From the IMG/VR virus record IMGVR_UViG_3300032296_003307, positions 62,001 through 126,000 of that record: a stretch of DNA of 64,000 nt, one strand, 5' to 3'. The notes beneath the pieces were generated by a model that made no database searches, had not been told where the DNA came from, and was given only the letters and a program-made list of their open reading frames with translations. This document shows, piece by piece, positions 5,447 to 64,000 of the stretch (positions are counted from its first letter, which is position 1; the number at the start of each line of letters is the position of its first letter). A program made the position numbers and the translations under genes.

Positions 5447-5939
5447 GTTATATTTATGACCATGAAAAAATTAGAATTAATACAAATTATTAGAGAAGAA
5501 ATCAACAAGATTGTTAAAGAAGATTTTCGAATTGGTGGATTTCTACATTACACATATAATGAAAAAACACCAGATTTAGAATACCCCTTATCAAATCCAA
5601 AAGATGTTTGGACTTTTTTCTATTACAACTTTATACATCCTAGTAAAAATGCTGGATTTTATTTACCTCCCAGTATTAAAAAATGTAAAAATGAAATTGA
5701 TTTTTTTAAACTAAAAAATCAAAAAGAATCAGATGTCGATCCGAAATATAAAACAGAACTGAAAGACTATGATAGTCCGACTTTTACAGCAGGTTTGGTA
5801 GGAAGTATTGAAAGAGCTATGAAGCAAAGAAAATATACCGATAAGGAGACAACTTTTACTAAAATGGCTATGCAAATTCATAGAATACTTTAAATATTAA
5901 ACAGTTTTAGAAAAATAAGTTTTAGAAAATAAGTTATAT
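5421..5939 (+). repeat. Direct repeats flanking an inserted ORF
   Basis: AAATATTAAACAGTTTTAGAAAA at 5421-5443 and 5892-5914; AGTTTTAGAAAATAAGTTATAT at 5432-5453 and 5918-5939. Confidence 0.85.
5462..5893 (+). CDS. Inserted hypothetical protein with MKKLELIQIIREE leader
   Basis: ORF track starts at 5456; ATG 5462 gives a leader like that of 44390; TATTTATG just upstream. Confidence 0.7.
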   Translation: MKKLELIQIIREEINKIVKEDFRIGGFLHYTYNEKTPDLEYPLSNPKDVWTFFYYNFIHPSKNAGFYLPPSIKKCKNEIDFFKLKNQKESDVDPKYKTELKDYDSPTFTAGLVGSIERAMKQRKYTDKETTFTKMAMQIHRIL

Positions 5940-7299
5940 GACATTAAACAATTTATCTCAATATGGAATAGGATTCCAGATTAAGGTATTATCATCACTT
6001 TTAACACACAAAGAATTTCTTCTGAATATTCAAGATGTGTTGAGTGAGGAATACTTTGATAATCAAGCCCACAAATGGATTATTAAACAAATCCTAGATT
6101 ACTTCCAAAAGTATCATACTACTCCTTCAATGGATGTTTTGAAGGTAGAATTAAAGAAAATCGACAATGAAGTTCTACAAGTTTCTATTAAAGAACAATT
6201 AAGAGAGGCCTACAAATCCTCAGATGAAGATCTTAAGTATGTTGAGGAAGAATTTTCTAACTTTTGTAAAAACCAACAGCTTAAAAAAGCGTTGTTAACA
6301 AGCGTAGACTTTTTGAATGCAGGAGACTATGATTCAATCAGATCAATTGTTGATAACGCATTAAAAGCAGGTCAAGACAAAAATATGGGACACGAATACA
6401 ACAAAGATGTTGAATCTCGTTATCGTGAAGACCATAGAACAATTGTTCCTACCCCTTGGGAATCAATCAATGAATTACTACAGGGTGGTTTAGGAAATGG
6501 AGACTTTGGATTGATATTTGGTAATCCTGGTGGTGGTAAATCTTGGTCATTAGTTGCTTTAGGAGGATTTGCTGTTAAATTAGGTTACAATGTTTTACAC
6601 TATACTCTAGAATTAGGTTCTGATTATGTAGGACGAAGATATGATGCTTTCTTTACTGGAGTAGGAGTTCAAAACATTACCAAACATAAAGACCAAGTTG
6701 AAGAAGCAGTTACTCAATTACCAGGACAATTGATTATTAAAGAATACCCAACAGGTAAAGCCTCTATTTCAACAATTGAGTCCCATATTAAAAAATGTAT
6801 TGACCTAGACTTTAAACCAGATTTGATTATTATTGATTACGTAGATCTTCTCCGTTCAAAAAGAAAGAATCGTGAGCGTAAGGAAGAGATAGATGATATT
6901 TATATTAGTACTAAGGGACTTGCTAGAGAATTGAACCTACCAGTTTGGTCTGTTTCTCAAGTAAATCGAGCTGGTGCAAAAGATGATATTATTGAAGGTG
7001 ATAAAGCAGCAGGTAGCTATGATAAAATGATGGTTACCGATGTTGCTATATCCTTATCAAGGAAACGTCAAGACAAAGTAAATGGGACAGGAAGATTTCA
7101 CATCATGAAAAATAGATACGGTATGGACGGCCTAACGTTCTCAGTGAAAGCAGATACTTCTACAGGTCATTTTGAAGTATCAACCCATATTGAAGACGAC
7201 GAACCTGAAACATCATCTACACCCTCGTTTGGAAATCAGATAGATTCAGTAGACAAAGCCCTTATTAAACAAAAATTTTTCGAACTACAAACAGATTAA
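5938..7299 (+). CDS. dnaB: Replicative DnaB/gp41-like helicase
   Basis: Walker A GNPGGGKS, HYTLEL, IIIDYVDLL, SQVNR, KNRYG. Confidence 0.9.
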   Translation: MTLNNLSQYGIGFQIKVLSSLLTHKEFLLNIQDVLSEEYFDNQAHKWIIKQILDYFQKYHTTPSMDVLKVELKKIDNEVLQVSIKEQLREAYKSSDEDLKYVEEEFSNFCKNQQLKKALLTSVDFLNAGDYDSIRSIVDNALKAGQDKNMGHEYNKDVESRYREDHRTIVPTPWESINELLQGGLGNGDFGLIFGNPGGGKSWSLVALGGFAVKLGYNVLHYTLELGSDYVGRRYDAFFTGVGVQNITKHKDQVEEAVTQLPGQLIIKEYPTGKASISTIESHIKKCIDLDFKPDLIIIDYVDLLRSKRKNRERKEEIDDIYISTKGLARELNLPVWSVSQVNRAGAKDDIIEGDKAAGSYDKMMVTDVAISLSRKRQDKVNGTGRFHIMKNRYGMDGLTFSVKADTSTGHFEVSTHIEDDEPETSSTPSFGNQIDSVDKALIKQKFFELQTD

Positions 7300-7314
7300 A
7301 ATTATTAAAAAACA

Positions 7315-9171: not shown

Positions 9172-9179
9172 TATTTATA
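9172..9179 (+). promoter_or_regulatory. Putative late promoter family TATTTATA, representative copy
   Basis: Sense-strand octamer shortly upstream of starts at 9172, 9247, 9808, 13726, 19500, 26515, 29837, 31574, 44375, 48142, 49468, 53103, 61200 and on the minus strand at 60581-60588; variants TATTTATT at 17427, 23540 and 54372, TATGTATA at about 46568. Confidence 0.8.
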
Positions 9180-9183
9180 CGGT

Positions 9184-9219: not shown

Positions 9220-9257
9220 ACTTTGTAAATTAATAACAGAAAATAATATTTATAAAC

Positions 9258-9560
9258 ATGAATAATTTCGATTTAAAAAAATATTTAGTAGAAAATAAAT
9301 TAACTAAAAATAGTCAAGTAGAAGAAAATGAACTTGAAAATATATTTAAACTAGATAATCAAAACAGGCAAATTACTTTTGACTTGAGAAAACTATCTAA
9401 TTCAGAATTTGAAGAAATATATGATTCATTGACTAATAACCCTGATATATATAGAATAAGAACTTATGGAAATGGTTTTATAGAGGTTGATTTAAATGAA
9501 TTAAATAATGAAAATAAATTATTATTGTTGAAATACAAAGATAAGATAAAAATTAAATAA
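9258..9560 (+). CDS. Cassette ORF with MNNFDLKKYLVENK leader, putative virion-internal protein
   Basis: TATTTATA upstream, hairpin downstream; leader similar to 48863. Confidence 0.7.
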   Translation: MNNFDLKKYLVENKLTKNSQVEENELENIFKLDNQNRQITFDLRKLSNSEFEEIYDSLTNNPDIYRIRTYGNGFIEVDLNELNNENKLLLLKYKDKIKIK

Positions 9561-9574
9561 AAACAAATAAAGTT

Positions 9575-9601: not shown

Positions 9602-9621
9602 TACATTATTGATTATAAATT

Positions 9622-13296: not shown

Positions 13297-13509
13297 ATGG
13301 AACAAATGTTATCACTTTTTGATTACCTAGGTTATGCTGCTGGTTCTAAATTAGGTAAAGATGTAGCAAAGGCCGCAGCAGCCGAAAAAGTTGGGTTCCA
13401 AACTAAAATAGTACAAAATCCAGCCTATTCAGGAGAAATAATGATGTATCCAAAATCATTTTTGGATAAATTTTTCAAAGGAGATGTTAACGACGATTTA
13501 CCCTTTTAA
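13297..13509 (+). CDS. Small protein ending in an SSB-like tail DDLPF
   Basis: C-terminus GDVNDDLPF. Confidence 0.65.
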   Translation: MEQMLSLFDYLGYAAGSKLGKDVAKAAAAEKVGFQTKIVQNPAYSGEIMMYPKSFLDKFFKGDVNDDLPF

Positions 13510-19459: not shown

Positions 19460-19527
19460 TTTTTTTTTTTTCATTTGGAAACCTTAATTTTCTTTCGTAT
19501 ATTTATAACAAATAAAAACTCAATAAA

Positions 19528-20130
19528 ATGAAAGACATAATTAGAATGAACCAGCTAGCTGGTATTATCACAGAAGGCCAAGCTAAAAAAATGATGGAAA
19601 TTTTAACTGAAGGAGAAGTAGATGAAATGGCTACCTTAATCAATAAAAAATCTTCAGAAGGAAGTGGAAAACCTGTACAAGTAGGTGATACAATCAAATG
19701 GCAACAAGCGGTGTCTAGTGGTGATAACTATTACGGTAAAAATTATGTAACAATGAAAGGTAAAGTAACCAAGTTGTTAGGATCAGCTAATGTAGAAGCT
19801 GAAGATCTTGAAACTGGTGATTTGTATAGAGTTTCTCGTAAAGAATTAACTGTGATTTCTGAAATGGAGGGAACTTTAAATGAAGCTAATCCTGATTTAA
19901 CAAAATTTAAAAATTACCTCAATAAAAAAAGTTTTGGTATGGAAGTATTAGATGAACCTGGACCAAACATTTATTTTGAATTCTGGACACCAGCTGGTTC
20001 ACAAGCTTTTGAAGATTTATTAAATAAATTAAGTCTAAAATTTAAGAAAAATACAGAAAGAGATGGTGGAAAGTTAGTAACTATGTATTATGTAGATAAA
20101 GCAAGTGCAAAACAACTTTTTGGAAAATAA
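19528..20130 (+). CDS. Cassette ORF with MKDIIRMNQLAGIITE leader, putative virion-internal protein
   Basis: Upstream DNA and first ~25 codons nearly identical to 26544; rest unrelated. Confidence 0.75.
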   Translation: MKDIIRMNQLAGIITEGQAKKMMEILTEGEVDEMATLINKKSSEGSGKPVQVGDTIKWQQAVSSGDNYYGKNYVTMKGKVTKLLGSANVEAEDLETGDLYRVSRKELTVISEMEGTLNEANPDLTKFKNYLNKKSFGMEVLDEPGPNIYFEFWTPAGSQAFEDLLNKLSLKFKKNTERDGGKLVTMYYVDKASAKQLFGK

Positions 20131-20194: not shown

Positions 20195-22789
20195 ATGTAT
20201 CAAGCAGTTTACTTTGATAGAGAGGAAAAACAATATTATCTAAGAGACGACAGATGGAAAGGTTTTAAAACAGTTCAACATTGGCCTACTCTTTATGTTG
20301 CTGATCCTGATGGTGACTTTGAAACACTAGAAGGTACCAAAGTATCCCCTGTTAAAAGAATGGATGATTGGAAAGATCCTAGATACTTTGAAAAAGACGT
20401 AGACAAACTTACTCGCTTACTTGTTGATTACTATTATGAATCTGATGATACACCAAAGTTTCATAATACAGTTTATTTAGATATTGAGTGTGAAATTGCC
20501 GGAGCATTAACTGAGGAAACAATTAAAGATCCTAAAGGTAAAATAACTGCTGTTGCTCTTTATGATGCTAATTCTAAAAAATATTATTGTTTACTTTTAG
20601 ATGAAAGTAAAACCTTTAAAGACATTGTTGAAGAAGATAAAGAGGTTATACCCTATGCCACTGAAAAAGAATTATTAAGTGGTTTTTTAGACAAATGGTA
20701 TGAATTAGACCCAACTATTATTACAGGTTGGAACAGTGGTTTCTTTGATATTCCTTACCTATACTATAGAATTTCTAAAGTATTAGGTGAAACACTTGCT
20801 CAAACCCTATCTCCAATAGGAAAAATTCAATTCACCCCCCAATTTCCAGATCAACCTGTTAATTTAGGAGGTATTAACCATCTTGACTATATGCTTTTGT
20901 TTAAAAAGTTTATTACAAAACAAGAGTCATCTTATCGTTTAGGTGATATTGGTAAAAAATATGCTAAATTAGAAAAAATAGAGTATCAAGGTTCACTTGA
21001 TAAATTATTTAAAGAAGATATTCATACATTTATTGAATATAACCTTCGAGACGTTGAAATTATTGTTGAGCTTGAAAAACGAATGAAGTTTATCGAACTA
21101 ACAGTTACAATTGGTCATTTATGTCATACAACTTACGAATCGATTTACTTTTCAACAGTATTAAATGAAGGTGCTATTTTAACTTACCTAAAACGTAAAG
21201 GAATAGTTTCACCTAATAAACCAACTACCTATAATCCAGCTCTAAAAACATTACAAGAGGAATATGCTGGTGGTTATTTGAAAGATCCTGTTCCTGGTTT
21301 ATATGAATGGGTTATTGATTTGGATTTTACATCTTTGTATCCCTCTATTATTCGTTCACTTAATATGGGAATTGAAACATTAGTTGGACGTGTTGTAAAC
21401 AGAGGTAAATTTGATAATCAATGGTCACTTAAAGAACTTAAAGCAATGAACCCTAGTACTATGGTTACTATTGAAAAAGTTAAAAAAGATCGTAGATTAG
21501 CCCAATCAGAAATTTCAGTAGGTGATTTAATAGAAATTATTGAAGGTAATGATTTAATTATTTCAGCACCCGGTGTTATGTTCCGTAAAGACAAATCAAG
21601 TGTTGTTTGTGAAATTCTAGCTGACTGGTTTGCTAAACGTCAAGAATATAAAAAGTTGATGAAAAAGGCATATAAAGAAGATAACGACCCTGTTATGGGA
21701 TCCTTTTATGATAGACGTCAACATGCTTATAAAATTAAATTAAATGATGTTTATGGTGTATTTGCAATTAATGGTTGGAGATACACTGATGGAAACAAAT
21801 TCATTAGTAAAGCAATTACTTTAACAGGTCAGCGCTTAACTCAAGAATCTATTAAGTTTGTAAACAATTGGATGAATGAGCAATTAGGTACAGACAATAA
21901 AGATTACATTGTTACCTCAGATACCGACTCATTATTCATTCAGGTTAAAGATTTAATTTTACAACGTAAACCTGAATTAGCTACAGCAGATCAAGAAACA
22001 ATTGTACAAGAGGTACTTAAAGTTGCTACTGAAATTCAAAAATTAGCAAATGAAAATCTACATACCATAGTACAAGAATTATTTAATGTTAAATACCCTA
22101 ATGAACCTCACTATTTTGAATTAAAACAAGAGGTTGTACTTGATAGAGGTTATTTTGCTGGTAAGCGTAGATACGCCCAACACATTGTTAATAAAGAAGG
22201 TGTACCAACAGATGAACTAGATGTTAAAGGATTGGATTTGATGAAATCAAATTTCCCACCATTGTTTAAAAAGTTTGGTGAACACATTATTAATGAAATT
22301 ATGTTTGGTAAACCTAAAACAGATATTGATAAACAAATACTTGATTTTAGAACCGAATTAAGAACAATTAATTGGAAACAAATTCTAAAACCTACTGGAT
22401 TAAAGAAAATGGGTGAATATTTGGCTTCACCTCCTAGAGCAGGTGAGGTATTTTCAAAATTAGGATTAAAATGTCCTATTAATACCAAAGCAGCTATTTA
22501 CTATAATGATATTTTAACTTTTAAAGGTTTAGATAAAAAATATCCAACATTCCAAATAGGTGATAAAATGTATATTGCTTATTTAAAAGATAATCCTTAT
22601 AGAATAGATGTTGTTGGTTTTAACGGATTTAATGACCCTCCTGAGGTAATGGAATTTATAGAAAAATACATTGATAGAGACGGTTTATTTGATTCAGTTA
22701 TGAAAAACAAATTAGAGTCATTATATTCAGATCTAGGATGGGGTGCTGTAGTACTCAATCAAAACATAAACAAGTTTTTTAAATTTTAA
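20195..22789 (+). CDS. polB: Family-B replicative DNA polymerase
   Basis: Exo I YLDIECE, Exo II GWNSGFFD, DLDFTSLYPS, KIKLNDVYG, SDTDS, KRRY. Confidence 0.95.
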   Translation: MYQAVYFDREEKQYYLRDDRWKGFKTVQHWPTLYVADPDGDFETLEGTKVSPVKRMDDWKDPRYFEKDVDKLTRLLVDYYYESDDTPKFHNTVYLDIECEIAGALTEETIKDPKGKITAVALYDANSKKYYCLLLDESKTFKDIVEEDKEVIPYATEKELLSGFLDKWYELDPTIITGWNSGFFDIPYLYYRISKVLGETLAQTLSPIGKIQFTPQFPDQPVNLGGINHLDYMLLFKKFITKQESSYRLGDIGKKYAKLEKIEYQGSLDKLFKEDIHTFIEYNLRDVEIIVELEKRMKFIELTVTIGHLCHTTYESIYFSTVLNEGAILTYLKRKGIVSPNKPTTYNPALKTLQEEYAGGYLKDPVPGLYEWVIDLDFTSLYPSIIRSLNMGIETLVGRVVNRGKFDNQWSLKELKAMNPSTMVTIEKVKKDRRLAQSEISVGDLIEIIEGNDLIISAPGVMFRKDKSSVVCEILADWFAKRQEYKKLMKKAYKEDNDPVMGSFYDRRQHAYKIKLNDVYGVFAINGWRYTDGNKFISKAITLTGQRLTQESIKFVNNWMNEQLGTDNKDYIVTSDTDSLFIQVKDLILQRKPELATADQETIVQEVLKVATEIQKLANENLHTIVQELFNVKYPNEPHYFELKQEVVLDRGYFAGKRRYAQHIVNKEGVPTDELDVKGLDLMKSNFPPLFKKFGEHIINEIMFGKPKTDIDKQILDFRTELRTINWKQILKPTGLKKMGEYLASPPRAGEVFSKLGLKCPINTKAAIYYNDILTFKGLDKKYPTFQIGDKMYIAYLKDNPYRIDVVGFNGFNDPPEVMEFIEKYIDRDGLFDSVMKNKLESLYSDLGWGAVVLNQNINKFFKF

Positions 22790-24068: not shown

Positions 24069-24392
24069 ATGAAACTAGAAGCATTATACAACGCAGTTAT
24101 CGTAAAACCTATTGAGGCAGAAGAAACCTCTTATGGTGGAATTATTGTTCCCGATTTGGGAAATGAGAAAAACAAACTTGGTAAAGTAGTAGCAGTTGGT
24201 AAAGGTTATTATTCAGTAACTGGAGCTTGGATTGAAACTGTACTAAAAGTTGGAGAAACTATTATTCTTCCTACTATGGGTTTTAGCAAACTAGAACACG
24301 AAGGAGAAGAGTATTGGATTGGTCCTGAAAACCAAGTACTAGGTAAACTAGTAGATGAAACTGAAGAAACAGAAGAAGAACTACCCTTTTAA
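24069..24392 (+). CDS. groES: Co-chaperonin GroES with acidic tail
   Basis: YNAVIVKP, mobile loop GGIIVPD, GKVVAVGKG, LKVGE. Confidence 0.9.
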   Translation: MKLEALYNAVIVKPIEAEETSYGGIIVPDLGNEKNKLGKVVAVGKGYYSVTGAWIETVLKVGETIILPTMGFSKLEHEGEEYWIGPENQVLGKLVDETEETEEELPF

Positions 24393-26543: not shown

Positions 26544-26951
26544 ATGAAAGACATAATTAGAATAAATCAATTAGCTGGCATTATTACCGAAGGTCAAGCC
26601 AGAAAGATGATGCAAGTATTAAATGAAGAAGAAACTAATGAATATTCCTTAGAAAATCTAATTAAACAATGGGTTAATGATAATGCTGGGGGTTATGGTC
26701 CTGATAAAGATGATCCTCAATATTTCAAATTTAAGAAAGAAATGAATATGCTTCTTAATAATACTCTTGAAGAATTTAATCCTGATTATTATGGGGATGA
26801 TACAACAATGAGTCCTAATGATATATTAGAAGATTTTATAGAAGAAGCTGTTAATATTATTTCTAAATATACAATGGGTTACTATGGAGATGATACCTCA
26901 TTCAGTCCCGAAGATATTAAGGATGATTTTTATATTTTTATAAAAAGGTAA
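26544..26951 (+). CDS. Cassette ORF with MKDIIRINQLAGIITE leader, acidic
   Basis: Leader shared with 19528; internal repeat YYGDDT-x-x-SP-x-DI-x-(E/D)DF occurs twice. Confidence 0.75.
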   Translation: MKDIIRINQLAGIITEGQARKMMQVLNEEETNEYSLENLIKQWVNDNAGGYGPDKDDPQYFKFKKEMNMLLNNTLEEFNPDYYGDDTTMSPNDILEDFIEEAVNIISKYTMGYYGDDTSFSPEDIKDDFYIFIKR

Positions 26952-44389: not shown

Positions 44390-44590
44390 ATGAAAAAATC
44401 TGAATTAATGCGAATAGTTAAAGAAGAGATGGAAAAATCTCTAATTAAAAAAGAGATAGAAAAATCTAAAGATAATAATCTTAAAGAAAAATTAAAAAAA
44501 GCTTTAGATGCACTTAAAAATAGTGGAAAAGTTACTAAAGAAGCCTTATTAGATTTTTTAGAAGGTTTTTTAAAAAACATAGACGATTAA
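44390..44590 (+). CDS. Small late protein with MKKSELMRIVKEE leader
   Basis: TATTTATA upstream; leader like 5462. Confidence 0.6.
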   Translation: MKKSELMRIVKEEMEKSLIKKEIEKSKDNNLKEKLKKALDALKNSGKVTKEALLDFLEGFLKNIDD

Positions 44591-48164: not shown

Positions 48165-48863
48165 ATGGGAACTAGAGCTCTTATTGGTTATTTAGACACA
48201 GATGGTGATCTAAAATTAACTTCAACATACAACCACTACGATGGTTATCCTCAAAACTTAGGTAAAGGTTTAGAAAATTTCTACAACAGTGATGCTAAAG
48301 CAGAAGAAGTTGCTAATGTAGGATATATTTCATTTTTAGATGGTGAAACAGGTGAAATTGAATCTAAAAACCAACAAATGCCTGATGTAACTAAATTGAC
48401 TGATAATTTTGAAGAAGCTATGATGGAAATAGCTGGAGAAATTGATGGAATGAGTGCTGATTATGGTTATATTTGGGATAATGAAAATCAAGAATGGATT
48501 ACTGTTAAAAACGAAGGCATTGGGTTAATGGCCAAAAATTTAGCATTGGATTTATCCCACCTAAAAGGCAAATTTGAAATGTCTCCCGAACAAACTATGG
48601 AAGCTAAAAAAGAAGTAAAAGAAGGTTATTATGGTACCACTAATGCTGAATACTATCTCCAAACCATAGGATATGATTCATTTGAAGATTTTTTTAATGA
48701 CAACCCAGGTGGTGAAGAGGCTTTAATTAATTGGATTGAAAGTGTTCCTGAATTTAGAAAAATGCTTATGCAACAAGGAATGATGGAAGCTAAAAAAGAT
48801 AAAGAAGAATTAGATGAATATTTCATCAACAAAATGAAATTTAGAGCTGGTATTATAAAATAA
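48165..48863 (+). CDS. Acidic late protein with C-terminal KMKFRAGIIK tag
   Basis: TATTTATA upstream; MGTR...YNHYDGYP; C-terminus resembles the RMxxLAGII leaders. Confidence 0.65.
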   Translation: MGTRALIGYLDTDGDLKLTSTYNHYDGYPQNLGKGLENFYNSDAKAEEVANVGYISFLDGETGEIESKNQQMPDVTKLTDNFEEAMMEIAGEIDGMSADYGYIWDNENQEWITVKNEGIGLMAKNLALDLSHLKGKFEMSPEQTMEAKKEVKEGYYGTTNAEYYLQTIGYDSFEDFFNDNPGGEEALINWIESVPEFRKMLMQQGMMEAKKDKEELDEYFINKMKFRAGIIK

Positions 48864-49408
48864 TGAAAAAAGCAGATAACTTCAACCCTGGTAAATGGCT
48901 AGTAGAAAATAAAATTACTACCCAATCTCGTTTAAACGAGGCTTTAGCTGGTCAAATGGGAGCTGTTGCTGCTGCTACTAAAAACATTAAAACACCATCA
49001 GGAGAAGAACCTTCATCTAAACCAGATGAATTCAATTTATCTGTATTGGTAAATCCTTTATATAAAAGATATGCTAATTACAACTACAAACTTAAAGATG
49101 TAGTATTTGAAAAAGCAAAAGTAAAAGAAGGATTTTTCTCCGGTATATTTAGTAGTAATCCTACTATTAAATTTGTTTTCACCAAAGTTGCTGATGGTAA
49201 AGAAGCAACAATCCAAGTAAAACTTAAAGGTGATAAATTTGTATTAAGTAATTCCTCAACCTCAGATGACGTAATAGGTAGTATTCCCGACAGTGGTGAA
49301 GCCACTAAGTTTATAAATTACTTATTAGGACAATCCGAGTGGAAAGATGACTTAAACAATTCATTTGAAAATATCAAAGACAAATTAACACCTGAATCTT
49401 TCAAATAA
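48863..49408 (+). CDS. Late protein with NFNPGKWLVENK...LNE leader
   Basis: Leader similar to 9258. Confidence 0.65.
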   Translation: MKKADNFNPGKWLVENKITTQSRLNEALAGQMGAVAAATKNIKTPSGEEPSSKPDEFNLSVLVNPLYKRYANYNYKLKDVVFEKAKVKEGFFSGIFSSNPTIKFVFTKVADGKEATIQVKLKGDKFVLSNSSTSDDVIGSIPDSGEATKFINYLLGQSEWKDDLNNSFENIKDKLTPESFK

Positions 49409-55123: not shown

Positions 55124-55461
55124 GCGAAACTGAATATTTGGTTTTTAAAACCTACAACAATCATTTTGAGCTATTTTCAGGACACGAAGGTGGTGCTGAG
55201 TTAAAGAAAATTGCTAACTATCAAGGTGGTAAATGGTTTTTTGATTCATATGATCAACAAAAGTTGTTTTGGTTTTTATTTAATTTGTTTAAAATGGATT
55301 TTGGAAAAGCATTAAAAAAGTTTTCTAGATCATTGAATGAAAAACCTAAAACATATGTTTTTACTTGTGCTAAACGTAGGTTTGATATTAAAGTACAAAA
55401 GATGAAACGTGGTTGGAGTAATTTGTTTTACGGATTTTATGAAGGGAATAGACGTGGCTAA
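55105..55461 (+). CDS. Hypothetical protein
   Basis: AAGTTATG start context. Confidence 0.55.
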   Translation: MFTYHLSETEYLVFKTYNNHFELFSGHEGGAELKKIANYQGGKWFFDSYDQQKLFWFLFNLFKMDFGKALKKFSRSLNEKPKTYVFTCAKRRFDIKVQKMKRGWSNLFYGFYEGNRRG

Positions 55462-55702
55462 ACCTATTTTTATTATCAGATTTCCTTATGTTAAAGAACA
55501 ACATATAGTAGATAAGTACTTAAAAATGTATAAGGAACTTGGTGAGCAAATGACTGATTATCACGTACTATGTCCTATGGACAATAGTGTTGAAAGAGTT
55601 GAATTTGAATGTTACAATGCTATCAATGCAACCGATGTTGAAATTGAAGAATTGAAGCAAATAATACTTGAAAAAATTAAAACAATAGAAAGTTATGAAT
55701 AA
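55409..55702 (+). CDS. Hypothetical protein, cassette array
   Basis: Ends KTIESYE within a junction repeat; true start probably a downstream GTG. Confidence 0.5.
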   Translation: MVGVICFTDFMKGIDVAKPIFIIRFPYVKEQHIVDKYLKMYKELGEQMTDYHVLCPMDNSVERVEFECYNAINATDVEIEELKQIILEKIKTIESYE

Positions 55703-56081
55703 AGAACAACAAGAATTATTGGATGATGTCTATAAAAATTGGTTTGAAAAAGGTAGAACTGAATTTGAAGAGTTTGCTGATCCTATGTTTATGAGTGAAG
55801 ATGCTTTAGGGGAGGAAAAATTTCATAAAATTTCTAAAGAATGGTTTATTGAACAAATCAAAACCGATACAGAGTTCTCTGAAAAGTGGGGATTAAAGAT
55901 TGAAGAACGAGAGTTGTTTAGATTAGAACGAATAAATATTGCTATTGAGAAAAAATTAACTCATAAAACTGCACACTTAACAAAAGACTTTGATTATCAG
56001 AAATGGTGCGATGAACATAATATCCCAACCAAACTAATTACAGTAACATACAACAATAAAACAATAGAAAGTTATGAATAA
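55695..56081 (+). CDS. Hypothetical protein, cassette array
   Basis: Starts MNKE and ends KTIESYE, both inside junction repeats. Confidence 0.65.
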   Translation: MNKEQQELLDDVYKNWFEKGRTEFEEFADPMFMSEDALGEEKFHKISKEWFIEQIKTDTEFSEKWGLKIEERELFRLERINIAIEKKLTHKTAHLTKDFDYQKWCDEHNIPTKLITVTYNNKTIESYE

Positions 56082-56232
56082 AGAAACTATAGTAATATCT
56101 ATTAACTTTACGGTTAAAGAATTCAACGAACATTATTGTATATTACAATATGATGATGAGAGAACTTTAAAATTATATTCCTTTGATAAGGAATACAAAA
56201 CAATTAAAGAATATTATGAACAATATAGATAA
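56074..56232 (+). CDS. Small hypothetical protein (52 aa), cassette array
   Basis: Translated by hand, starts MNKETIVI. Confidence 0.5.
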   Translation: MNKETIVISINFTVKEFNEHYCILQYDDERTLKLYSFDKEYKTIKEYYEQYR

Positions 56233-56431
56233 ACTAATAGAACAAGGAGCTGAATTAGCACGTAAACATGAAGAACTACGTGATGAAATTCTAAATAATC
56301 CTGATATGCCACAGGAGTTAAAAGATATTATCAATAAAAGTAGAATACCTGATGATAAGATAGTTGATTTAACTAGTGGTAAAAAAATAAAATATATTAA
56401 TCCTGATACATTTGAAATTGAATATGAATAA
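56216..56431 (+). CDS. Small hypothetical protein starting MNNIDK
   Basis: First 6 codons mimic the thyA start. Confidence 0.55.
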   Translation: MNNIDKLIEQGAELARKHEELRDEILNNPDMPQELKDIINKSRIPDDKIVDLTSGKKIKYINPDTFEIEYE

Positions 56432-56645
56432 TCTAGACAAAAAATACATTATTGATGGTATTACTATCGATAAAACAAAAGAGGGGTATAGAGTTTTTAC
56501 AATACCAACCCAACATTTTGATATTGTTAATTTAGATGAACTAACTAACGATAGATTTGATTTGGAAATTAAAAGACAGGAACAATATAAAAAAGATAGT
56601 TCCGAATTAATTAACTTATGGTTAAATGAAAATGAACAACATTGA
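56424..56645 (+). CDS. Small hypothetical protein starting MNNLDKKY
   Basis: First 8 codons mimic the thyA start. Confidence 0.55.
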   Translation: MNNLDKKYIIDGITIDKTKEGYRVFTIPTQHFDIVNLDELTNDRFDLEIKRQEQYKKDSSELINLWLNENEQH

Positions 56646-59053: not shown

Positions 59054-59602
59054 ATGAAAGTAGAAACAACACCAATTAAAGACCTTTTGGTAATCACACC
59101 AAAGGTGTATGAAGACGACAGAGGATATTTCTTAGAGTCATTTAACTCAAGAGCATTTCGAGATGCCGGACTATATTACAATTTTGTTCAAGACAATCAA
59201 TCCGTAAGTCTAAAAAACGTAATTAGAGGGTTACATTTTCAAAAAAGTGTACCTCAGGCTAAATTAGTCAGGGTAATTGCCGGTGCAATTTGGGATGTGG
59301 CGGTAGATTTAAGAAAAGGTAGTAAGACCTATGGACAATGGTTCGGTATTGAACTTAATGAAGATAATTTCAAACAACTATTAGTACCAAGAGGATTTGC
59401 ACACGGTTTCTCAGTACTATCGGATGTTGCCGTTGTAAGCTATAAATGTGATGAGATATATATGTTGTCCGCTAGTGGAGGAATTATTTATTCAGACCCA
59501 ACCTTGAAAATAGATTGGAAGATAACAGAAAAACCAATAGTCTCAGATAAAGACGGTGAATTACCTAAATATGAGGATATAATAAAGGAACTTAACTTTT
59601 AG
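59054..59602 (+). CDS. rmlC: dTDP-4-dehydrorhamnose 3,5-epimerase
   Basis: DDRGYF, QDNQS, RGLHFQ, QAKLVR, DVAVDLR, PRGFAHGF. Confidence 0.92.
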   Translation: MKVETTPIKDLLVITPKVYEDDRGYFLESFNSRAFRDAGLYYNFVQDNQSVSLKNVIRGLHFQKSVPQAKLVRVIAGAIWDVAVDLRKGSKTYGQWFGIELNEDNFKQLLVPRGFAHGFSVLSDVAVVSYKCDEIYMLSASGGIIYSDPTLKIDWKITEKPIVSDKDGELPKYEDIIKELNF

Positions 59603-59951
59603 AAAGTTCCATTACCATTTTTCTTTTTATTTCCTTTAATAATGAATAAATTTCTTTCATCGCTGAATCATTTTTGATTTTTGTTAACACCGAAGATATT
59701 CTCGTTGGATTAACATCGTCAAATAGTTCCATTAAATCATCAGTTGTTTCAACATCAAATAAGGCGAAAAGTTGTTTTTTAGTCATTTCGTTTTTTTCAT
59801 CCTCCAATATATCTCTAACATTAAACTCACCATTAATTTGTTGAGATGTTGGTTTTTGTATTTTAAGACCCTGAAACGAGGGTGAATTGATTGAAATCTG
59901 TTCATTAAGACCCATCAATTTTAACATTCTTTTTTGGCTTTCGTTAATCAT
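59592..59951 (-). CDS. Late protein with RMLKLMGLNEQ leader
   Basis: Directly downstream of the M23 gene; shared leader. Confidence 0.65.
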   Translation of the reverse strand: MINESQKRMLKLMGLNEQISINSPSFQGLKIQKPTSQQINGEFNVRDILEDEKNEMTKKQLFALFDVETTDDLMELFDDVNPTRISSVLTKIKNDSAMKEIYSLLKEIKRKMVMELSKS

Positions 59952-59952
59952 T

Positions 59953-60576
59953 TTATTTTTTTGGACAGAAGTTTTTATTTATTATTTTATCCGGGTCTAC
60001 AAATTGACCATTCTTTTTTAATTCAAAATGTAAATGAGGTGCTTGTGAATTTCCTTTCTTTGATGGTGAGTCACTCTTAGCACCACCACTAACACCAACA
60101 ACTTCACCTCTTTTAACAGTTCCTGACATTTTATCAATTTTAGACATGTGACAGAATTTGGCTTGAAGTTTTTTCTCATCGTTCTTGATGATTATCATTC
60201 CACCACAATCACCGTTAGTTGGATTGGATGAGTTACCAAAACTACCTGAAATTGTTCCATCAAAAGGTGCAACAACTTTTTCATAATTTGCGGCTAAATC
60301 AACCGCAGGATGATATGAATATCCTAAAAGTTTTCTTGGACCAAAAGGACTTGTAACGTTCCAAGGGTTAGACGCACCACACATTGGAGATATAACATCA
60401 TCAGGTTTAGACACAGATTCAGTGTCGACCTCAGAATCAACGTCTTTTTTCTCGTCAGAGTCACCTGAAAATAAGTTACCGATAAAAGATTTAATTTTAT
60501 CTAAAACGGACTGTTCATTTAAACCCATTAAGGTTAATATTCTTTCCGTTTCTTCATTTAGTGGTTGTTTAGACAT
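59953..60576 (-). CDS. M23-family peptidoglycan endopeptidase with leader
   Basis: VTSPFG, HPAVD, KFCHM, GNSQAPHLHFE; ATG at 60576 after minus-strand TATTTATA. Confidence 0.85.
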   Translation of the reverse strand: MSKQPLNEETERILTLMGLNEQSVLDKIKSFIGNLFSGDSDEKKDVDSEVDTESVSKPDDVISPMCGASNPWNVTSPFGPRKLLGYSYHPAVDLAANYEKVVAPFDGTISGSFGNSSNPTNGDCGGMIIIKNDEKKLQAKFCHMSKIDKMSGTVKRGEVVGVSGGAKSDSPSKKGNSQAPHLHFELKKNGQFVDPDKIINKNFCPKK

Positions 60577-60590
60577 ATTGTATAAATACA

Positions 60591-61163
60591 TCAATCCCAC
60601 CAATTTTCAATACGTCGTTCTAATATTTTAAATAGTAGTTTTTTAGCCTTTTCATGTCTTACAATCCCAACCGCTAAATAACCCTTTCTTCCTTCAATAA
60701 AATAATTAACAAATCTTGGGTCCCTTTTCGCCACTCTTAGTGAGTGCGGATACTTTTCTAAGTATTGGTCTATATCGTCTCTTTTTGTGTCAAATACGAC
60801 TTCATACAAATTGTTTTCTGTAGGAACAAATTTCATATCCACATCACGATAATCAAAGTGTTCTGATTGATAATATTCTTCTTGAATCCTACCAATTAAT
60901 TTTTCACAAATTCTCATATAACGAACTTCGTTTTCCCATCCAACAAACCTCTGATTTTTTTCAAAAAGGTCTGCAGTATTTTTAATCTTGAACTTCAAAA
61001 CTTCAAAAATGAAATGGTCGTCCCAATCACGGTCTTTCCAAATTATTGGAAACCATCTCCAAAGATTTCTAAATCCTTGAAAAATGTCACGATGTAAGTG
61101 TTTTGCATCCCATTTAAACCATCTATATAGTTTCCAATACCACTGATTATATTCTTTTTTCAT
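60591..61163 (-). CDS. Hypothetical Trp-rich protein
   Basis: 190-aa ORF. Confidence 0.65.
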   Translation of the reverse strand: MKKEYNQWYWKLYRWFKWDAKHLHRDIFQGFRNLWRWFPIIWKDRDWDDHFIFEVLKFKIKNTADLFEKNQRFVGWENEVRYMRICEKLIGRIQEEYYQSEHFDYRDVDMKFVPTENNLYEVVFDTKRDDIDQYLEKYPHSLRVAKRDPRFVNYFIEGRKGYLAVGIVRHEKAKKLLFKILERRIENWWD

Positions 61164-61210
61164 ATTGATAAAGATATTAAATTATTATGAGTTAACAAGT
61201 ATTTATATTT

Positions 61211-62698
61211 GTGGGACAAAGATTTCTTATATCTGAAAGTGAAAAAAAAGATATATTAGGGTTATATGAAGACATCATAAGACCTTACCATAAATTAATG
61301 CAATGTAAATTTAGTTCCGATGGTAAAGTAATTGTTTATGAAAATGTTGCATATAGTACTGAAACAGGTGAAGAACTACTCATTAATGAAGGTTGGTCTT
61401 TAAGTGATATATTACATGCGGGTGCAGATGTTTTGTCTGCGGGTTTGGATTTTGTAATACCAGGTTCAGGGGCAATTGTTGATATATTGAACGGACTAAG
61501 TTATATAATTGAAGCTCAGTTCAAAAGCGAAGCGGAAAAAGATAGTTTATATCTTATGGCAGCGGTAACATTTGCATTTGTTGTTTTGCCAGGTCCATTA
61601 CAAACTGTTGCGGTACCACTAAAACAATTTTTGAAAGGAGGTGCAAAAGGTGCATCAAAATTAGTTTTATTAGCACTTAAAGTTGTTGGAGGGATTCTAG
61701 ATAAAGTTTTACTTGGAATACCCAAATTGATTAATAAAGCATTGAGTACCAAATTAGGGAAAGGTATATTAGGTAAGTGGGGTAAAAAAATATCTGACTT
61801 TTTTTCAGCGTTTTCCGCAAGGGTAAAAAATTTATTTAACAAAATGACTGGAGGCTCCGCAGCACAAACCGTAACGAAGAAAACTTTGACAGGTGCTGAA
61901 AAATTAGCAGTCAAGTCGTCCAAATTAACACCCAAAGCGTTAAGTAAGATGACCGTTATGTCGCAAAAATTAGTTGGAAAGATAATTGGTAACAAGGCGG
62001 TGGCACTTAAAGCTCTAGGATTTAAGCCAGGAAAAATGTATAGATATTTGGGAAAAAACGGAAAAATGAATACAGTTTACATCAAAGAAATAAAACCTGA
62101 TGGGACTGTGATAGGACTTTTTGGAAAAAAATCGGGAGATACTGTTCTTGGAACCCAAGCTGCGGTTCCCGCAGAAACATTTTTAGGAAGAGGAATAGGG
62201 GGTCCATGGGGTAGAAGAGGTTCATCAGTCATGGTTCCTTTATTTGTTAAAAGAATGACTGATGCTATGAGAGATGATGGTACTATTGATGCGAATGTTT
62301 TAGCCGCTGGTGGTGAATTAAACGCCGATGAAGTTTCCGCGGCATCTTTAGAGTTTGCACCTGAGGATGTGGTTGCTGATTACCAAGGGGATACCGGTCA
62401 GTACGATGTTTCAAGTAACGTAACATCAATTCAAAATGCGTTAATGGAGTTAGACCCTAATTCATTACCCAAATTTGGCGCTGATGGTAAATTCGGACCT
62501 GAAACATTATCCGCAATTGAAAAATTCCAAAAAGATAATGGACTTACACCAAACAAAAAGGCTGATAAAGCTTTTGTCAAAAAATTAATAGAAAAATTAC
62601 CGGCTAATAGTCCAAACAAAGAAGAATTAAATTCATTATTAACTAAACCATCTGAGGTTAAATCAACTGAAACAGATGCTGAAATTGAAACAACATAA
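61211..62698 (+). CDS. Putative virion protein: leader, hydrophobic Gly/Ala-rich region, C-terminal peptidoglycan-binding domain
   Basis: MGQRFLISESEKKDILGLY leader; IQNALMEL...GADGKFGPETLSAIEKFQKDNGL. Confidence 0.7.
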   Translation: MGQRFLISESEKKDILGLYEDIIRPYHKLMQCKFSSDGKVIVYENVAYSTETGEELLINEGWSLSDILHAGADVLSAGLDFVIPGSGAIVDILNGLSYIIEAQFKSEAEKDSLYLMAAVTFAFVVLPGPLQTVAVPLKQFLKGGAKGASKLVLLALKVVGGILDKVLLGIPKLINKALSTKLGKGILGKWGKKISDFFSAFSARVKNLFNKMTGGSAAQTVTKKTLTGAEKLAVKSSKLTPKALSKMTVMSQKLVGKIIGNKAVALKALGFKPGKMYRYLGKNGKMNTVYIKEIKPDGTVIGLFGKKSGDTVLGTQAAVPAETFLGRGIGGPWGRRGSSVMVPLFVKRMTDAMRDDGTIDANVLAAGGELNADEVSAASLEFAPEDVVADYQGDTGQYDVSSNVTSIQNALMELDPNSLPKFGADGKFGPETLSAIEKFQKDNGLTPNKKADKAFVKKLIEKLPANSPNKEELNSLLTKPSEVKSTETDAEIETT

Positions 62699-62702
62699 AA
62701 AA

Positions 62703-63101
62703 ATGGGAAAAAGATTTATTATAACAGAAGAAGAGAAAAAAAGAATTCTCGGACTTTATGAACAGGACGAACCAACACCTGAAACAACTGATGAAAAACC
62801 ATCATTAATTGACACCTTAAAACAAATGGGATTTGAAGAAAGTTCTGACCGTATTGGTTTGTGGCAAATAAAAAAAGACGACAATACATATGCTGCGGTT
62901 TTAACGTTGAATCCAACAAAAGACCAAATTAGCAAAGCGGAAATTGTAGGAACTCCAGATATCCTTTCCACAATACAAAAGGCATTCAACGAGGTCAACA
63001 TTCCAAATATTATTTCAGGTGAAAAACTAATTACTCGAGCACCATTTAAAGAAGAAAATTTAATTAAGAAATTATCAGAACCGGCAAAAAGTGAGTTTTA
63101 A
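62703..63101 (+). CDS. Protein with MGKRFIITEEEKKRILGLYE leader
   Basis: Leader paralogous to 61211. Confidence 0.65.
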   Translation: MGKRFIITEEEKKRILGLYEQDEPTPETTDEKPSLIDTLKQMGFEESSDRIGLWQIKKDDNTYAAVLTLNPTKDQISKAEIVGTPDILSTIQKAFNEVNIPNIISGEKLITRAPFKEENLIKKLSEPAKSEF

Positions 63102-64000
63102 TGAAATTCAAAATAACCCATACACAATATAAAAAATTAACAGAATCATTGGACCCTGATGTTCAAGATTTTTTTAGTGCTGAAAAGGGTAAGTTTCATT
63201 TGTTGGCACCAATTCCAATTAGTAGAACAACCGCTTCTGAGGTTATAAAAAGAATTTTGAAATCAGAAAACAAAAAGTATTTTTTTGGTGATGATATTGA
63301 CCTTAATGAATTATCTTTAGTTAACAGATTAAGATTTGGTGTTTATTTAGAAGAGGTCTTAAGCGAGGTTGGTACAAGAGGTCATAACTATGAAGGATTT
63401 ATGGCAGGTCTTTTTGATGGATATCTACCTAAAGACACTAATTATTGGTTTGATTATAGGATTAGAGAGGGTTCGGTAGAACAAAAGTTTATAAAAAGTA
63501 GTGGAGAATCACCACAACTTAAAACATATGCTAATTTCATAAAAAACAATCCTCAATACGAAGGTTTATTAGATAAACAAAATACTCCTGAAATCATCAA
63601 ACAGAAAATACAAATGTTAAACAGTCCTGAGTTTTTAACAGACATTTACATTTTTTCAACTAAAACACCTGAACCAGGAAAAGGTTATAGAATCGATAAT
63701 TATGTTGTTTACAAAGATGAGATGATTAAGATTTTAATGAATCCTAATAATCTTAGAGAGCCTAAACAAAAAGGACAAACCGCTTTGAGAATACCGGCAA
63801 GTGTCTTGGGGGGAATTGATTTTACCATAATAACTCCAAGATATAAATCGTCCGAACTACAGGAACTTGTAAAATTGGACGAAAAAGAACGTGCGGTGTT
63901 AAGTGCGTTTGGTAAACATAGTGAACACATAAGACCAGATGTAATTAAAGATTTGAGTAAAAACTTAGATGAGTTTATCGAATCACTTATTGAAATACAA
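63101..64000 (+). CDS. 3'-truncated protein with MKFKITHTQYKKLTE leader and possible PD-(D/E)xK nuclease fold
   Basis: 300 open codons to the window end; GHNYEGFMAGLFDG...FDY-x7-EQK. Confidence 0.6.
   Translation, partial: MKFKITHTQYKKLTESLDPDVQDFFSAEKGKFHLLAPIPISRTTASEVIKRILKSENKKYFFGDDIDLNELSLVNRLRFGVYLEEVLSEVGTRGHNYEGFMAGLFDGYLPKDTNYWFDYRIREGSVEQKFIKSSGESPQLKTYANFIKNNPQYEGLLDKQNTPEIIKQKIQMLNSPEFLTDIYIFSTKTPEPGKGYRIDNYVVYKDEMIKILMNPNNLREPKQKGQTALRIPASVLGGIDFTIITPRYKSSELQELVKLDEKERAVLSAFGKHSEHIRPDVIKDLSKNLDEFIESLIEIQ

What the first reader, a model, noticed from the sequence alone, without database searches (positions are those of the whole stretch)
5462..63145. About 12 unrelated late proteins carry short shared leaders ending in (I/L/V)xE: candidate capsid-targeting code
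Seen: four leader families. (a) MKKxELxxI(I/V)(R/K)EE at 5462 and 44390. (b) NFxxxK(Y/W)LVENK at 9258 and 48863. (c) R(M/I)xxL(A/M)G(I/L)xxE at 19528, 26544, 59951 and 60576, with a C-terminal version KMKFRAGIIK at 48863. (d) MGxRFxIxExEKKxILGLYE at 61211 and 62703, plus MKFKITHTQYKKLTE at 63101. Nearly all sit under TATTTATA. Known: T4 internal proteins use a 10-aa capsid-targeting sequence ending in Glu that is removed by prohead protease gp21 at (I/L)xE sites. Inference: a modular address system loading diverse cargo (peptidase, possible nuclease, unknowns) into heads for injection.
Basis: partly seen in the sequence, partly recalled or inferred. Interest (0 to 1): 0.78.

Follow-up and report, generated by a model that had tools for sequence, protein, structure and literature searches.

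The report
Capsid-address leaders on phage proteins
A large uncultured T4-like phage puts a few short, interchangeable end-peptides, copied from its own head-scaffold proteins and ending in the head protease's cutting motif, on many unrelated small proteins, most likely to load them into the capsid; this is inferred from sequence and not yet tested at the bench.

Summary
Ten of the eleven cited N-terminal leaders form five pairs (a, b, c, c', d) that match only in their first 17-49 residues. The C-terminal ...RAGIIK tag on ORF 48165-48863 is real too. Only the 63101 leader is unverified.

The window is the replication/accessory module of a 268.7-kb T4-like phage contig, syntenic with cultured Flavobacterium phage immuto.

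In public data, leaders a, b and c sit on 179, 102 and 78 non-redundant cargos. Homologous cargos carry different tags (a/b/e; a versus the C-terminal tag). Synonymous sites are near saturation while the peptides stay conserved. Conservation stops at a second (I/L)xE.

The new link is to head assembly:
- Leader c is the C-terminal tail of the gp22-like scaffold (...RMQKLAGIIK, 63 of 64 head modules; ...RWQKLAGIK in this genome).
- Leader a is the N-terminus of a small head-module protein.
- Leader b marks the variable gene beside the gp21-type (Peptidase_S77) protease.

This genome encodes that protease, scaffold and gp23. TATTTATA is the late promoter.

Best reading: prohead-docking peptides clipped by the protease, a multi-address relative of the T4 capsid targeting sequence. 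Packaging, cleavage and injection are untested. Confidence 0.62.

The parts
5462..5893 (+). Leader-a protein (143 aa). Leader MKKLELIQIIREEINKIVKE with IxE at residues 10-12 and VxE at 18-20. ORFan cargo.
   Evidence: (lead_a HMM E = 1e-8); no Pfam or PHROG hit
44390..44590 (+). Leader-a protein (66 aa), MKKSELMRIVKEE...
   Evidence: (E = 6e-6)
9258..9560 (+). Leader-b protein (100 aa), MNNFDLKKYLVENKLTKNSQVEE. In relatives its cargo carries leader a or e instead.
   Evidence: E = 1e-13
48863..49408 (+). Leader-b protein (181 aa), ...NFNPGKWLVENKITTQSRLNE...
   Evidence: E = 2.5e-5
19528..20130 (+). Leader-c protein (200 aa). Leader MKDIIRMNQLAGIITEGQAKKMMEILTE holds the docking motif RMNQLAGII, then ITE and LTE sites. 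A disordered linker follows, then an SH3/Tudor-like beta-barrel and an alpha/beta domain.
   Evidence: (E = 9e-19)
26544..26951 (+). Leader-c protein (135 aa), MKDIIRINQLAGIITEGQARKMMQVLNE; different cargo.
   Evidence: (E = 5e-16)
59592..59951 (-). Leader-c' protein (119 aa), ...QKRMLKLMGLNEQ...; a divergent c-type motif R-h-x-x-L-(A/M)-G-(I/L).
   Evidence: no relatives elsewhere
59953..60576 (-). Leader-c' protein (207 aa), ...ERILTLMGLNEQ..., with a Peptidase_M23 cargo.
   Evidence: (PF01551, E = 2.4e-14)
61211..62698 (+). Leader-d protein (495 aa, GTG start), (M)GQRFLISESEKKDILGLYE. The cargo has hydrophobic segments and a C-terminal PG_binding_1 domain.
   Evidence: (PF01471, E = 6e-10)
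62703..63101 (+). Leader-d protein (132 aa), MGKRFIITEEEKKRILGLYEQ.
63101..64000 (+). ORF running off the window, MKFKITHTQYKKLTES...; claimed leader not verified.
   Evidence: (no profile hit)
48165..48863 (+). Protein (232 aa) with a C-terminal tag: ...ELDE-YFINKMKFRAGIIK*, the scaffold-tail motif with LDE 14 residues upstream of the end. A homologous cargo in L034 carries N-terminal leader a instead.
   Evidence: PHROG 1987, unknown function
19500..19507 (+). TATTTATA late-type promoter core. Same element at 9247, 26515, 44375, 48142 and 61200 (+ strand), at 60581-60588 (- strand), and as the variant TATTTATG at 5451.
   Evidence: class assigned from immuto and relatives

Best explanation
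The leaders are prohead-docking peptides of a T4-like phage.

Anatomy. Each is a short terminal peptide of 14-28 residues. It imitates an end of one of the phage's own head-morphogenesis proteins:
- Leader c and the C-terminal ...(R/L)AGII(K) tag copy the C-terminal tail of the gp22-like scaffold.
- Leader a copies the N-terminus of a small protein that occupies the gp67 position of the head module.
- Leader b marks the variable gene next to the prohead protease.

Proposed mechanism. The genes are transcribed from the late promoter together with the structural genes. The tagged proteins would bind the assembling prohead core or the inner face of the gp23 shell. The Peptidase_S77 (gp21-type) protease would then cut at the (I/L/V)xE sites that lie on the cargo side of the docking motif, freeing the cargo inside the head. 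The cargo may later leave with the DNA.

Shown here:
- modularity and tag swapping;
- selection at the peptide level;
- the position of the (I/L)xE motifs;
- identity of leader c with the scaffold tail;
- the late-type promoter;
- protease, scaffold and gp23 in the same genome.

Inferred, not shown: binding, cleavage, retention in the head and ejection.
For: 1. Modularity.
- Leader c heads more than 100 otherwise unrelated metagenomic proteins.
- An exhaustive profile search finds 145 representatives at 50% identity, nearly all with the leader at residues 1-31.
- Leaders a, b and c sit on 179, 102 and 78 non-redundant cargos.
- In unsupervised N-terminal clustering, leader clusters have many cargo clusters, while ordinary gene families have one.

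2. Tag swapping on homologous cargo.
- The 9258 cargo carries a, e or b.
- The 48165 cargo carries the C-terminal tag here and N-terminal leader a in L034.
- There are further a/b and a/c cases.

3. Selection on the peptide, not the DNA.
- In-window pairs give pS 0.56 against pN 0.19. For the c pair it is 0.65 against 0.07.
- Across contigs pS is 0.57-0.72, and Ser and Leu use 5-6 codons.

4. Anatomy.
- A first [ILV]xE is about 90% conserved.
- Information content falls to background immediately after a second LxE.
- [IL]xE is enriched over other window genes.

5. Link to the head.
- In an MCP-anchored sample chosen without regard to leaders, 63 of 64 scaffolds end in ...Q(K)LAGII(K), with (V/I)xE about 16 residues upstream.
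- The leader-c HMM hits 51 scaffold C-termini.
- The leader-a HMM hits the small head-module protein in 14 loci.
- Leader-b proteins flank the S77 protease.

6. Same genome. Contig 26-35 kb encodes Portal_T4, Peptidase_S77, a scaffold ending ...IME-VNDQFARWQKLAGIK*, and Gp23.

7. Cleavage logic is conserved. The T4 gp23 site LTE|A aligns with VSE|A of the immuto capsid protein. T4 gp21 cuts after L/I-x-E, and T4 targeting sequences are 10-19-residue propeptides (PMC9026906; T4 sequences read).

8. Late promoter.
- In immuto, TATTTATA precedes the terminase, portal, sheath, tape-measure and hub genes.
- In relatives it precedes portal (68%) and g284 (86%), but none of the SSB, UvsX or helicase genes.

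9. Phage-specific. Leader b gives at least 120 viral loci but one 1-kb contig in 185,579 cellular genomes.

10. Structure. AF2 models the leader as a low-confidence flexible extension, detached from the folded cargo.
Against: - There is no virion proteomics or N-terminal data for any phage that carries these leaders. Immuto is the only cultured carrier of leader b that was found. A 31-residue leader-c query matched no isolate, although immuto does carry divergent c-type leaders.
- Leaders a-d show no significant sequence similarity to the T4 targeting sequence.
- [ILV]xE is a three-residue motif in K/E/I/L-rich sequence, and the residue after Glu varies.
- In this genome the leader genes lie in the replication/accessory module. 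No a, b or c leader was found in the 36 kb of head and tail genes upstream.
- TATTTATA also precedes the clamp loader and HNH-like genes.
- The pS/pN values across contigs are biased, because the loci were fetched with amino-acid-level patterns.
- The 495-aa membrane-like d protein is an awkward capsid cargo.
- Family c' has no relatives.
- The binding partner of the scaffold tail is unknown.
Confidence: 0.62

Rival explanations
1. The leaders do dock proteins onto the assembling prohead and are clipped. But the tagged proteins are transient assembly or core components, degraded or expelled like T4 gp22, gp67 and gp68. They are not cargo kept for injection.
For: Leaders a and c copy termini of scaffold and core proteins that in T4 are removed from the head (PMC9026906). 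The small a-type head-module protein is conserved, not variable.
Against: Hundreds of unrelated, fast-turning-over ORFan cargos are not expected for assembly factors. T4 internal proteins and Alt, which use the same logic, are retained and ejected (PMC9026906).
Confidence: 0.15
2. The leaders address proteins to some other shared hub unrelated to the capsid, for example the phage GroEL/GroES, a membrane site, a host complex or a protease (degron). The resemblance to scaffold termini would then reflect a common binding partner outside the head.
For: The leader genes sit among replication and accessory genes, and two c-leader genes flank the polymerase/GroEL region. The cargo function is unknown.
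Against: The same motif forms the extreme C-terminus of the scaffold directly upstream of gp23 in 63 of 64 head modules. Expression is from the late promoter. The (I/L)xE sites lie on the cargo side of the motif. The leaders have no hydrophobic signal-peptide core (sequences).
Confidence: 0.1
3. The shared 5' ends are mobile regulatory or recombination cassettes (promoter plus translation-start region). They are conserved at the DNA or RNA level and shuffle ORFans, like the PeSL cassettes of T4-type phages. The peptide itself would have no function.
For: About 50 nt upstream of the c leaders is conserved with the promoter. Tag swapping implies recombination at leader-cargo junctions.
Against: Synonymous sites inside the leaders are near saturation while the amino acids are kept. 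Many a and b leaders lack the promoter. The same peptide also occurs at C-termini and on the scaffold.
Confidence: 0.05
4. For families c' and d only. The M23 peptidase, the membrane/PG-binding protein and their neighbours at 59.6-63.1 kb form a lysis or cell-wall module. Their shared N-termini would serve that function, not capsid loading.
For: M23 and PG_binding_1 domains match endolysin PHROGs. The d protein has hydrophobic segments. Neither family was linked to head modules, and c' is unique to this genome.
Against: c' keeps the R-h-x-x-L-(A/M)-G-(I/L) core of the scaffold tail, followed at once by LNE. Leader d ends in LYE and is modular on three other cargos. Both are under TATTTATA.
Confidence: 0.3

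Closest known systems
T4 capsid targeting sequences (CTS) of internal proteins IPI/IPII/IPIII and Alt, processed by prohead protease gp21
   Same: A short N-terminal propeptide shared by unrelated proteins. It ends in hydrophobic-x-Glu. The phage is T4-type with a gp21-family protease, gp22-like scaffold and gp23. The cargos are polymorphic ORFans. The T4 targeting sequence MKTYQEFIAE also resembles the T4 gp22 N-terminus MLKEQLIAE (PMC9026906).
   Different: There are at least five leader families instead of one, each 14-28 residues with two candidate sites. They have no detectable sequence homology to the T4 CTS. One address is a copy of the scaffold C-terminal tail and works at either protein end. 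Hundreds of cargos are spread over a very abundant aquatic clade. Nothing has been tested experimentally.
Scaffold C-terminal coat-binding tails with a release cleavage (herpesvirus scaffold/protease M-site; P22 scaffold C-terminal domain, used to load enzymes into P22 particles)
   Same: A conserved extreme C-terminal peptide on the scaffold, with a protease-type site about 16 residues upstream. Other proteins carry the same tail, as the herpes protease shares the scaffold tail. P22 cargo fusions: abstract of 10.1101/2022.02.10.479872. The herpes facts are from general knowledge and were not checked here.
   Different: Here the tail is naturally grafted onto many unrelated proteins, and mostly at the N-terminus. 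The binding partner was not determined.
Encapsulin cargo-loading peptides
   Same: Short terminal peptides address diverse cargo to the interior of an HK97-fold shell (PMC8346489, abstract).
   Different: This is a DNA-packaging phage capsid with portal, scaffold and maturation protease. No homology to encapsulin peptides was tested or claimed.
Propeptides of head and ejection proteins in giant phages (phiKZ, 201phi2-1, SPN3US)
   Same: Many head-internal proteins are cut after Glu by a gp21-related protease. The motif there is S/A-x-E (PMC9026906; PMC5694885, PMC7411985 and PMC10052503 were listed).
   Different: A different cleavage motif and lineage. Those substrates were found by mass spectrometry. 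Interchangeable short address families were not reported in the papers read here.
PeSL mobile regulatory cassettes of T4-type phages (recalled from memory, not checked here)
   Same: Conserved 5' modules in front of shuffled ORFans. The c leaders do travel with a conserved promoter block.
   Different: Conservation here is in the encoded peptide, not the DNA.

Membership tests
T4-type CTS / gp21-processed propeptide | Short N-terminal peptide shared by otherwise unrelated proteins | tested here: met
T4-type CTS / gp21-processed propeptide | Peptide ends in the gp21 motif L/I-x-E | tested here: met
   Sequence level only. Conserved [ILV]xE lies at about residues 12-16 and at the end of conservation. 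Enrichment is shown.
T4-type CTS / gp21-processed propeptide | Same genome encodes a gp21-family prohead protease with a T4-type portal, scaffold and gp23 | tested here: met
   PF03420, PF07230 and PF07068 on contig 26-35 kb; termini read
T4-type CTS / gp21-processed propeptide | Sequence homology to the T4 CTS (MKTYQEFIAE / MKTFKEF...) | tested here: not met
   Leaders a-d share only the general form. Only the rare family e (MKHIxxFESFxNE) looks similar, and that is by eye.
T4-type CTS / gp21-processed propeptide | Made when proheads assemble (late expression) | tested here: met
   By promoter class only. TATTTATA precedes structural genes in immuto and relatives and the leader genes.
T4-type CTS / gp21-processed propeptide | Protein is incorporated into the prohead, the propeptide is removed, and the mature part is ejected with the DNA | not testable with these tools
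   No proteomic data found
Scaffold-tail docking peptide (P22/herpes type) | Conserved peptide at the extreme C-terminus of the scaffold, next to the capsid gene | tested here: met
   63 of 64 MCP-anchored loci; more than 100 loci; own genome
Scaffold-tail docking peptide (P22/herpes type) | Same peptide present on non-scaffold proteins | tested here: met
   The leader-c HMM hits scaffold tails. C-terminal tags occur on other proteins.
Scaffold-tail docking peptide (P22/herpes type) | Peptide binds the inner face of the capsid protein | not testable with these tools
Mobile regulatory cassette (PeSL-like) | Conservation at nucleotide level, independent of coding | tested here: not met
   pS 0.56-0.72 inside the leaders. 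Only the c promoter block is conserved as DNA.
Secretion signal peptide | Hydrophobic core of about 10 or more residues after a basic N-terminus | tested here: not met
   By inspection of the leaders. No predictor was run.

The most novel reading that the evidence does not exclude
An abundant aquatic clade of T4-like phages uses a combinatorial protein-packaging code. At least five interchangeable end-peptides mimic the termini of the phage's own scaffold and core proteins. They load several hundred fast-evolving ORFan effector families (plus a cell-wall peptidase) into the capsid for co-injection. Different addresses would specify different docking sites, copy numbers or release steps.
Probability: 0.35. 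Interest if true: 0.85.

Novelty: new variant of a known kind. Interest (0 to 1): 0.72.

Why it matters
- It would extend the T4 capsid-targeting idea from one short peptide in coliphages to a multi-address system in a very abundant environmental phage clade.
- It would give a mechanistic origin for such addresses: mimicry of scaffold termini.
- It would mark several hundred ORFan families as candidate injected proteins, such as anti-defence or host-takeover factors.
- It would offer natural tags for loading proteins into large capsids.
- It is directly testable, because Flavobacterium phage immuto is cultured and carries at least nine such genes.

Tried and rejected
- Near-identity DNA searches of the window against isolate phages found only short hits to immuto queE/thyX.
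- tblastn and blastn with the leader-c cassette against isolates gave no real match. Leader b occurs only in immuto among isolates.
- Pfam and PHROGs on the leader proteins found only M23 and PG_binding_1. Seventy further cargos had no Pfam hit.
- ESM-Atlas look-alikes returned only viral hypothetical proteins. Foldseek on the 19528 model gave weak SH3/Tudor-like matches only.
- I first suspected that TATTTATA was a host-type early promoter of the Bacteroidota -33/-7 kind. I rejected this because it precedes structural genes and not SSB, UvsX or helicase.
- I tried to reach the window's own head module through the MCP searches. Its contig was not among those returned. Walking upstream gene by gene did reach it.
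- The first cargo-cluster analysis chained everything through long leaders. Only the four clean tag-swap clusters were used.
- Literature searches for the motifs, for Mel-JY01 and for immuto virion data found nothing relevant.
Full report
**1. Observation**

- Six-frame regex scans find each motif only at those ORF starts.
- They form five pairs: a (5462, 44390), b (9258, 48863), c (19528, 26544), c' (59951-, 60576-) and d (61211 with a GTG start, 62703).
- blastp among the twelve proteins aligns only residues 1 to about 17-49 within a pair, and nothing significant beyond.
- Leader HMMs built almost entirely from other contigs recover exactly the a, b and c pairs (E from 9e-19 to 2.5e-5). The next hit is noise at E >= 1.
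- The 63101 'leader' has no support.
- Every leader has hydrophobic-x-Glu at about residues 9-16 and again at about 17-28. Two or more [IL]xE in the first 30 residues occur in 7 of 11 leader proteins against 4 of 96 other genes (p = 3.6e-6). This is really five independent families, not eleven proteins.

**2. Context**

The window is bases 62,001-126,000 of a 268,739-bp JGI/IMG-VR contig.

It encodes a gp32-like SSB, UvsX, a 5'-3' exonuclease, a DnaB-type helicase, ribonucleotide reductase, 7-deazaguanine genes, a family-B polymerase, GroES/GroEL, a clamp loader, a PD-(D/E)XK nuclease, glycosyltransferases and thymidylate synthase. This is the replication/accessory module of a T4-like phage. 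Gene order matches cultured Flavobacterium phage immuto, 160 kb.

Walking upstream on the same contig reached the structural genes:
- tape-measure-sized, hub and sheath genes;
- then Terminase_6N, Portal_T4 and a conserved 285-aa protein;
- Peptidase_S77 (the gp21 family);
- a 363-aa gp22-like scaffold;
- a 587-aa Gp23.

**3. The leaders are modular addresses**

- A word-indexed search with the 19528 protein returned more than 100 proteins of 110-240 aa. They share only MKDIIRMNQLAGIITEGQAKKMMEILNE and then diverge completely.
- An exhaustive profile search of 1.84 billion 50%-identity representatives found 145 carriers, nearly all with the leader at residues 1-31.
- Back-translated patterns for leaders a and b each hit the 120-locus ceiling in IMG/VR, with up to seven leader-a genes in 7 kb.
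- After removing related cargos, a, b and c sit on 179, 102 and 78 different cargos.
- Unsupervised clustering of N-termini separates ordinary gene families (one cargo cluster each) from leader clusters (236, 89 and 30 cargo clusters).
- Leader d occurs on three further cargos. c' occurs only here.
- Leader b is essentially absent from 185,579 cellular genomes: one 1-kb contig.
- None of 70 cargos matches Pfam.

**4. Tags are interchangeable**

- Homologues of the 9258 cargo carry leader a, or a fifth leader e (MKHIxxFESFxNE), instead of b.
- The 48165 cargo carries a C-terminal ...RAGIIK tag here and in L240, but N-terminal leader a in L034.
- Two other cargos switch a/b and a/c.

**5. The peptide is what is selected**

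- In-window pairs differ at 56% of synonymous but 19% of non-synonymous sites. For the c pair the figures are 65% against 7%.
- Across contigs pS is 0.57-0.72, and conserved Ser and Leu use 5-6 codons. The pN values there are biased downward, because the loci were fetched with amino-acid patterns. The synonymous saturation is not affected by that bias.
- This excludes a purely DNA- or RNA-level element. The roughly 50 nt upstream of the c leaders is conserved as a promoter block.

**6. Anatomy**

- Each family has a first [ILV]xE kept in about 90% of members: IKE in a, LVE in b, ITE in c.
- Each has a second LxE after which information content drops to background. LNE closes 80% of c leaders.
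- AF2 models residues 1-47 of the 19528 protein as low-confidence short helices plus a linker. These are detached from a beta-barrel and an alpha/beta domain.

**7. Link to head assembly (the new result)**

*Scaffold tail.*
- While checking promoters, I saw that the codons just upstream of gp23 genes read ...RMQKLAGIIK-stop.
- That tail ends every complete gp22-like scaffold in the first set, immuto's included. It ends more than 100 further loci.
- In a sample of head modules chosen only by capsid-protein similarity, it ends 63 of 64 scaffolds.
- The leader-c HMM, built from N-terminal leaders, hits 51 scaffold C-termini in that sample.
- About 16 residues before the scaffold end there is a conserved (V/I)(I/V)xE.
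- In C-terminally tagged non-scaffold proteins, an [ILVM]xE sits 4-17 residues before the motif. The candidate cut therefore always lies on the cargo side of the docking motif.
- This genome's scaffold ends ...KPIME-VNDQFARWQKLAGIK.
- Microcystis phage Mel-JY01 has the same arrangement...ILNE-SNNVVERMKKLAGIVK.

*Leaders a and b.*
- The leader-a HMM hits the N-terminus of a conserved 58-130-aa protein. It lies between the portal-side genes and the protease, the position of T4 gp67. Its sequence continues ...EL(D/N)E-ANVTGG.
- The variable gene or genes between protease and scaffold mostly carry b-type leaders, or another family, MKLxxIILE.

*Cleavage site.*
- The T4 gp23 maturation site LTE|A aligns with VSE|A of the immuto capsid protein. 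The clade consensus there is (I/L)(V/I)xE|A.

**8. Timing**

- In immuto, (A/C)TATTTATA precedes the terminase, portal, tail-spike, sheath, hub and tape-measure genes.
- In relatives it precedes portal (68%) and the 284-aa head gene (86%), but none of the SSB, UvsX or helicase genes. Those genes carry GTTGCA-N17-TATATTAA instead.
- It is therefore the late promoter.
- In the window it lies directly before six leader genes and before the C-tagged gene. A TATTTATG variant precedes 5462. The remaining leader genes follow in the same operons.

**9. Mechanism proposed**

- The tagged proteins are made late.
- They dock on the prohead through peptides that imitate scaffold or core termini.
- The S77 protease cuts at (I/L/V)xE on the cargo side of the docking motif.
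- The freed cargo stays in the head and may be ejected with the DNA.

This follows the T4 rule. T4 propeptides of 10-19 residues target internal proteins to the core, and gp21 removes them after L/I-x-E. Alt is trimmed at both ends (PMC9026906). The T4 sequences read here show the same mimicry on a small scale: IPII/IPIII MKTYQEFIAE|A against gp22 MLKEQLIAE|A.

Binding, cleavage, retention and ejection are inferences.

**10. Rivals**

- A DNA-level cassette is contradicted by synonymous saturation and by the C-terminal and scaffold copies of the motif.
- A different cellular hub cannot be excluded, but it does not explain the scaffold tail or the late promoter.
- The tagged proteins might be transient assembly factors rather than injected cargo.
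- The c' and d genes (M23 peptidase; hydrophobic protein with a PG-binding domain) may belong to lysis.

**11. Known or new**

The principle (targeting peptide plus gp21 cleavage) is known from T4. It is echoed by herpesvirus and P22 scaffold tails, by encapsulin loading peptides and by giant-phage propeptides.

New here:
- several interchangeable address families;
- their derivation from scaffold and core termini, including an address that works at either end of a protein;
- the scale, in a clade with at least 8000 capsid-protein clusters (the tool's scoring cap).

No paper in the searchable library contains these motifs.

**12. Limits**

- All evidence is comparative.
- Most loci were ascertained through leader patterns, apart from the MCP-anchored set and the protein searches.
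- The contig beyond 126 kb was not read.
- The cargo functions are unknown.

Noticed in passing
window 2423-3271, 13297-13509, 24069-24392: Three unrelated proteins end in an SSB-type acidic tip ...D(D/E)LPF: the gp32-like SSB, a 70-aa ORF, and the phage GroES. This may be a second shared terminal address, the partner-recruiting tip of SSB.
   Followed up: no
window 9247/9258, 44375/44390, 61200/61211, 60588/60576(-): At several leader genes the TATTTATA element ends only 3-7 nt before the start codon. The spacing is 16-25 nt at structural genes of immuto. This suggests leaderless or near-leaderless late mRNAs.
   Followed up: no
window 26961, 9808, 13726, 29837, 31574, 53103: The late-type promoter also precedes the clamp loader (49 nt upstream), HNH-like genes, a 66-aa conserved ORF and a lipoprotein-like ORF. 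SSB genes of relatives instead carry GTTGCA-N17-TATATTAA.
   Followed up: partly
L381-L449 (e.g. L395, L399), L257:23355-23576: After its predicted cleavage site, the small head-module protein repeats the segment that follows the capsid protein's maturation site. The small protein reads E|ANVTGG..SFTPG.GAQYATP and gp23 reads E|ANxTG..FTAG.GEQWAGV. It looks like a mimic of the gp23 N-terminal region.
   Followed up: partly
L461:5871-6078 (own contig 31.9-32.1 kb): In this genome the slot between protease and scaffold holds no gene. In relatives it is filled by leader-b genes. Here it is a 208-nt spacer with a GC-rich inverted repeat (CCCTCC...GGAGGG).
   Followed up: no
MW353175 125626-126867 and 117631-118632: Two immuto annotations look wrong. 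The 'DNA polymerase phi-like protein' is the gp22-type scaffold. The 'cob(I)alamin adenosyltransferase' starts with a b-type leader under a late promoter.
   Followed up: partly
window 20195-22789 versus MW353175 37898-40231: The window phage has a family-B (gp43-like) polymerase where syntenic immuto has a family-A polymerase. This looks like a polymerase replacement within one clade.
   Followed up: no
window 55439-56645: An array of small overlapping genes whose products end alike (...TIESYE, ...EIEYE), with the next start overlapping the stop.
   Followed up: no
L416, L417, L420, L421, L424, L426, L427 (gene after the S77 protease): A further candidate address family, MK(L/I)xxIILE..., occupies the slot next to the protease. 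It also heads kinase-like and other proteins (cluster of 28 proteins and 12 cargos).
   Followed up: partly
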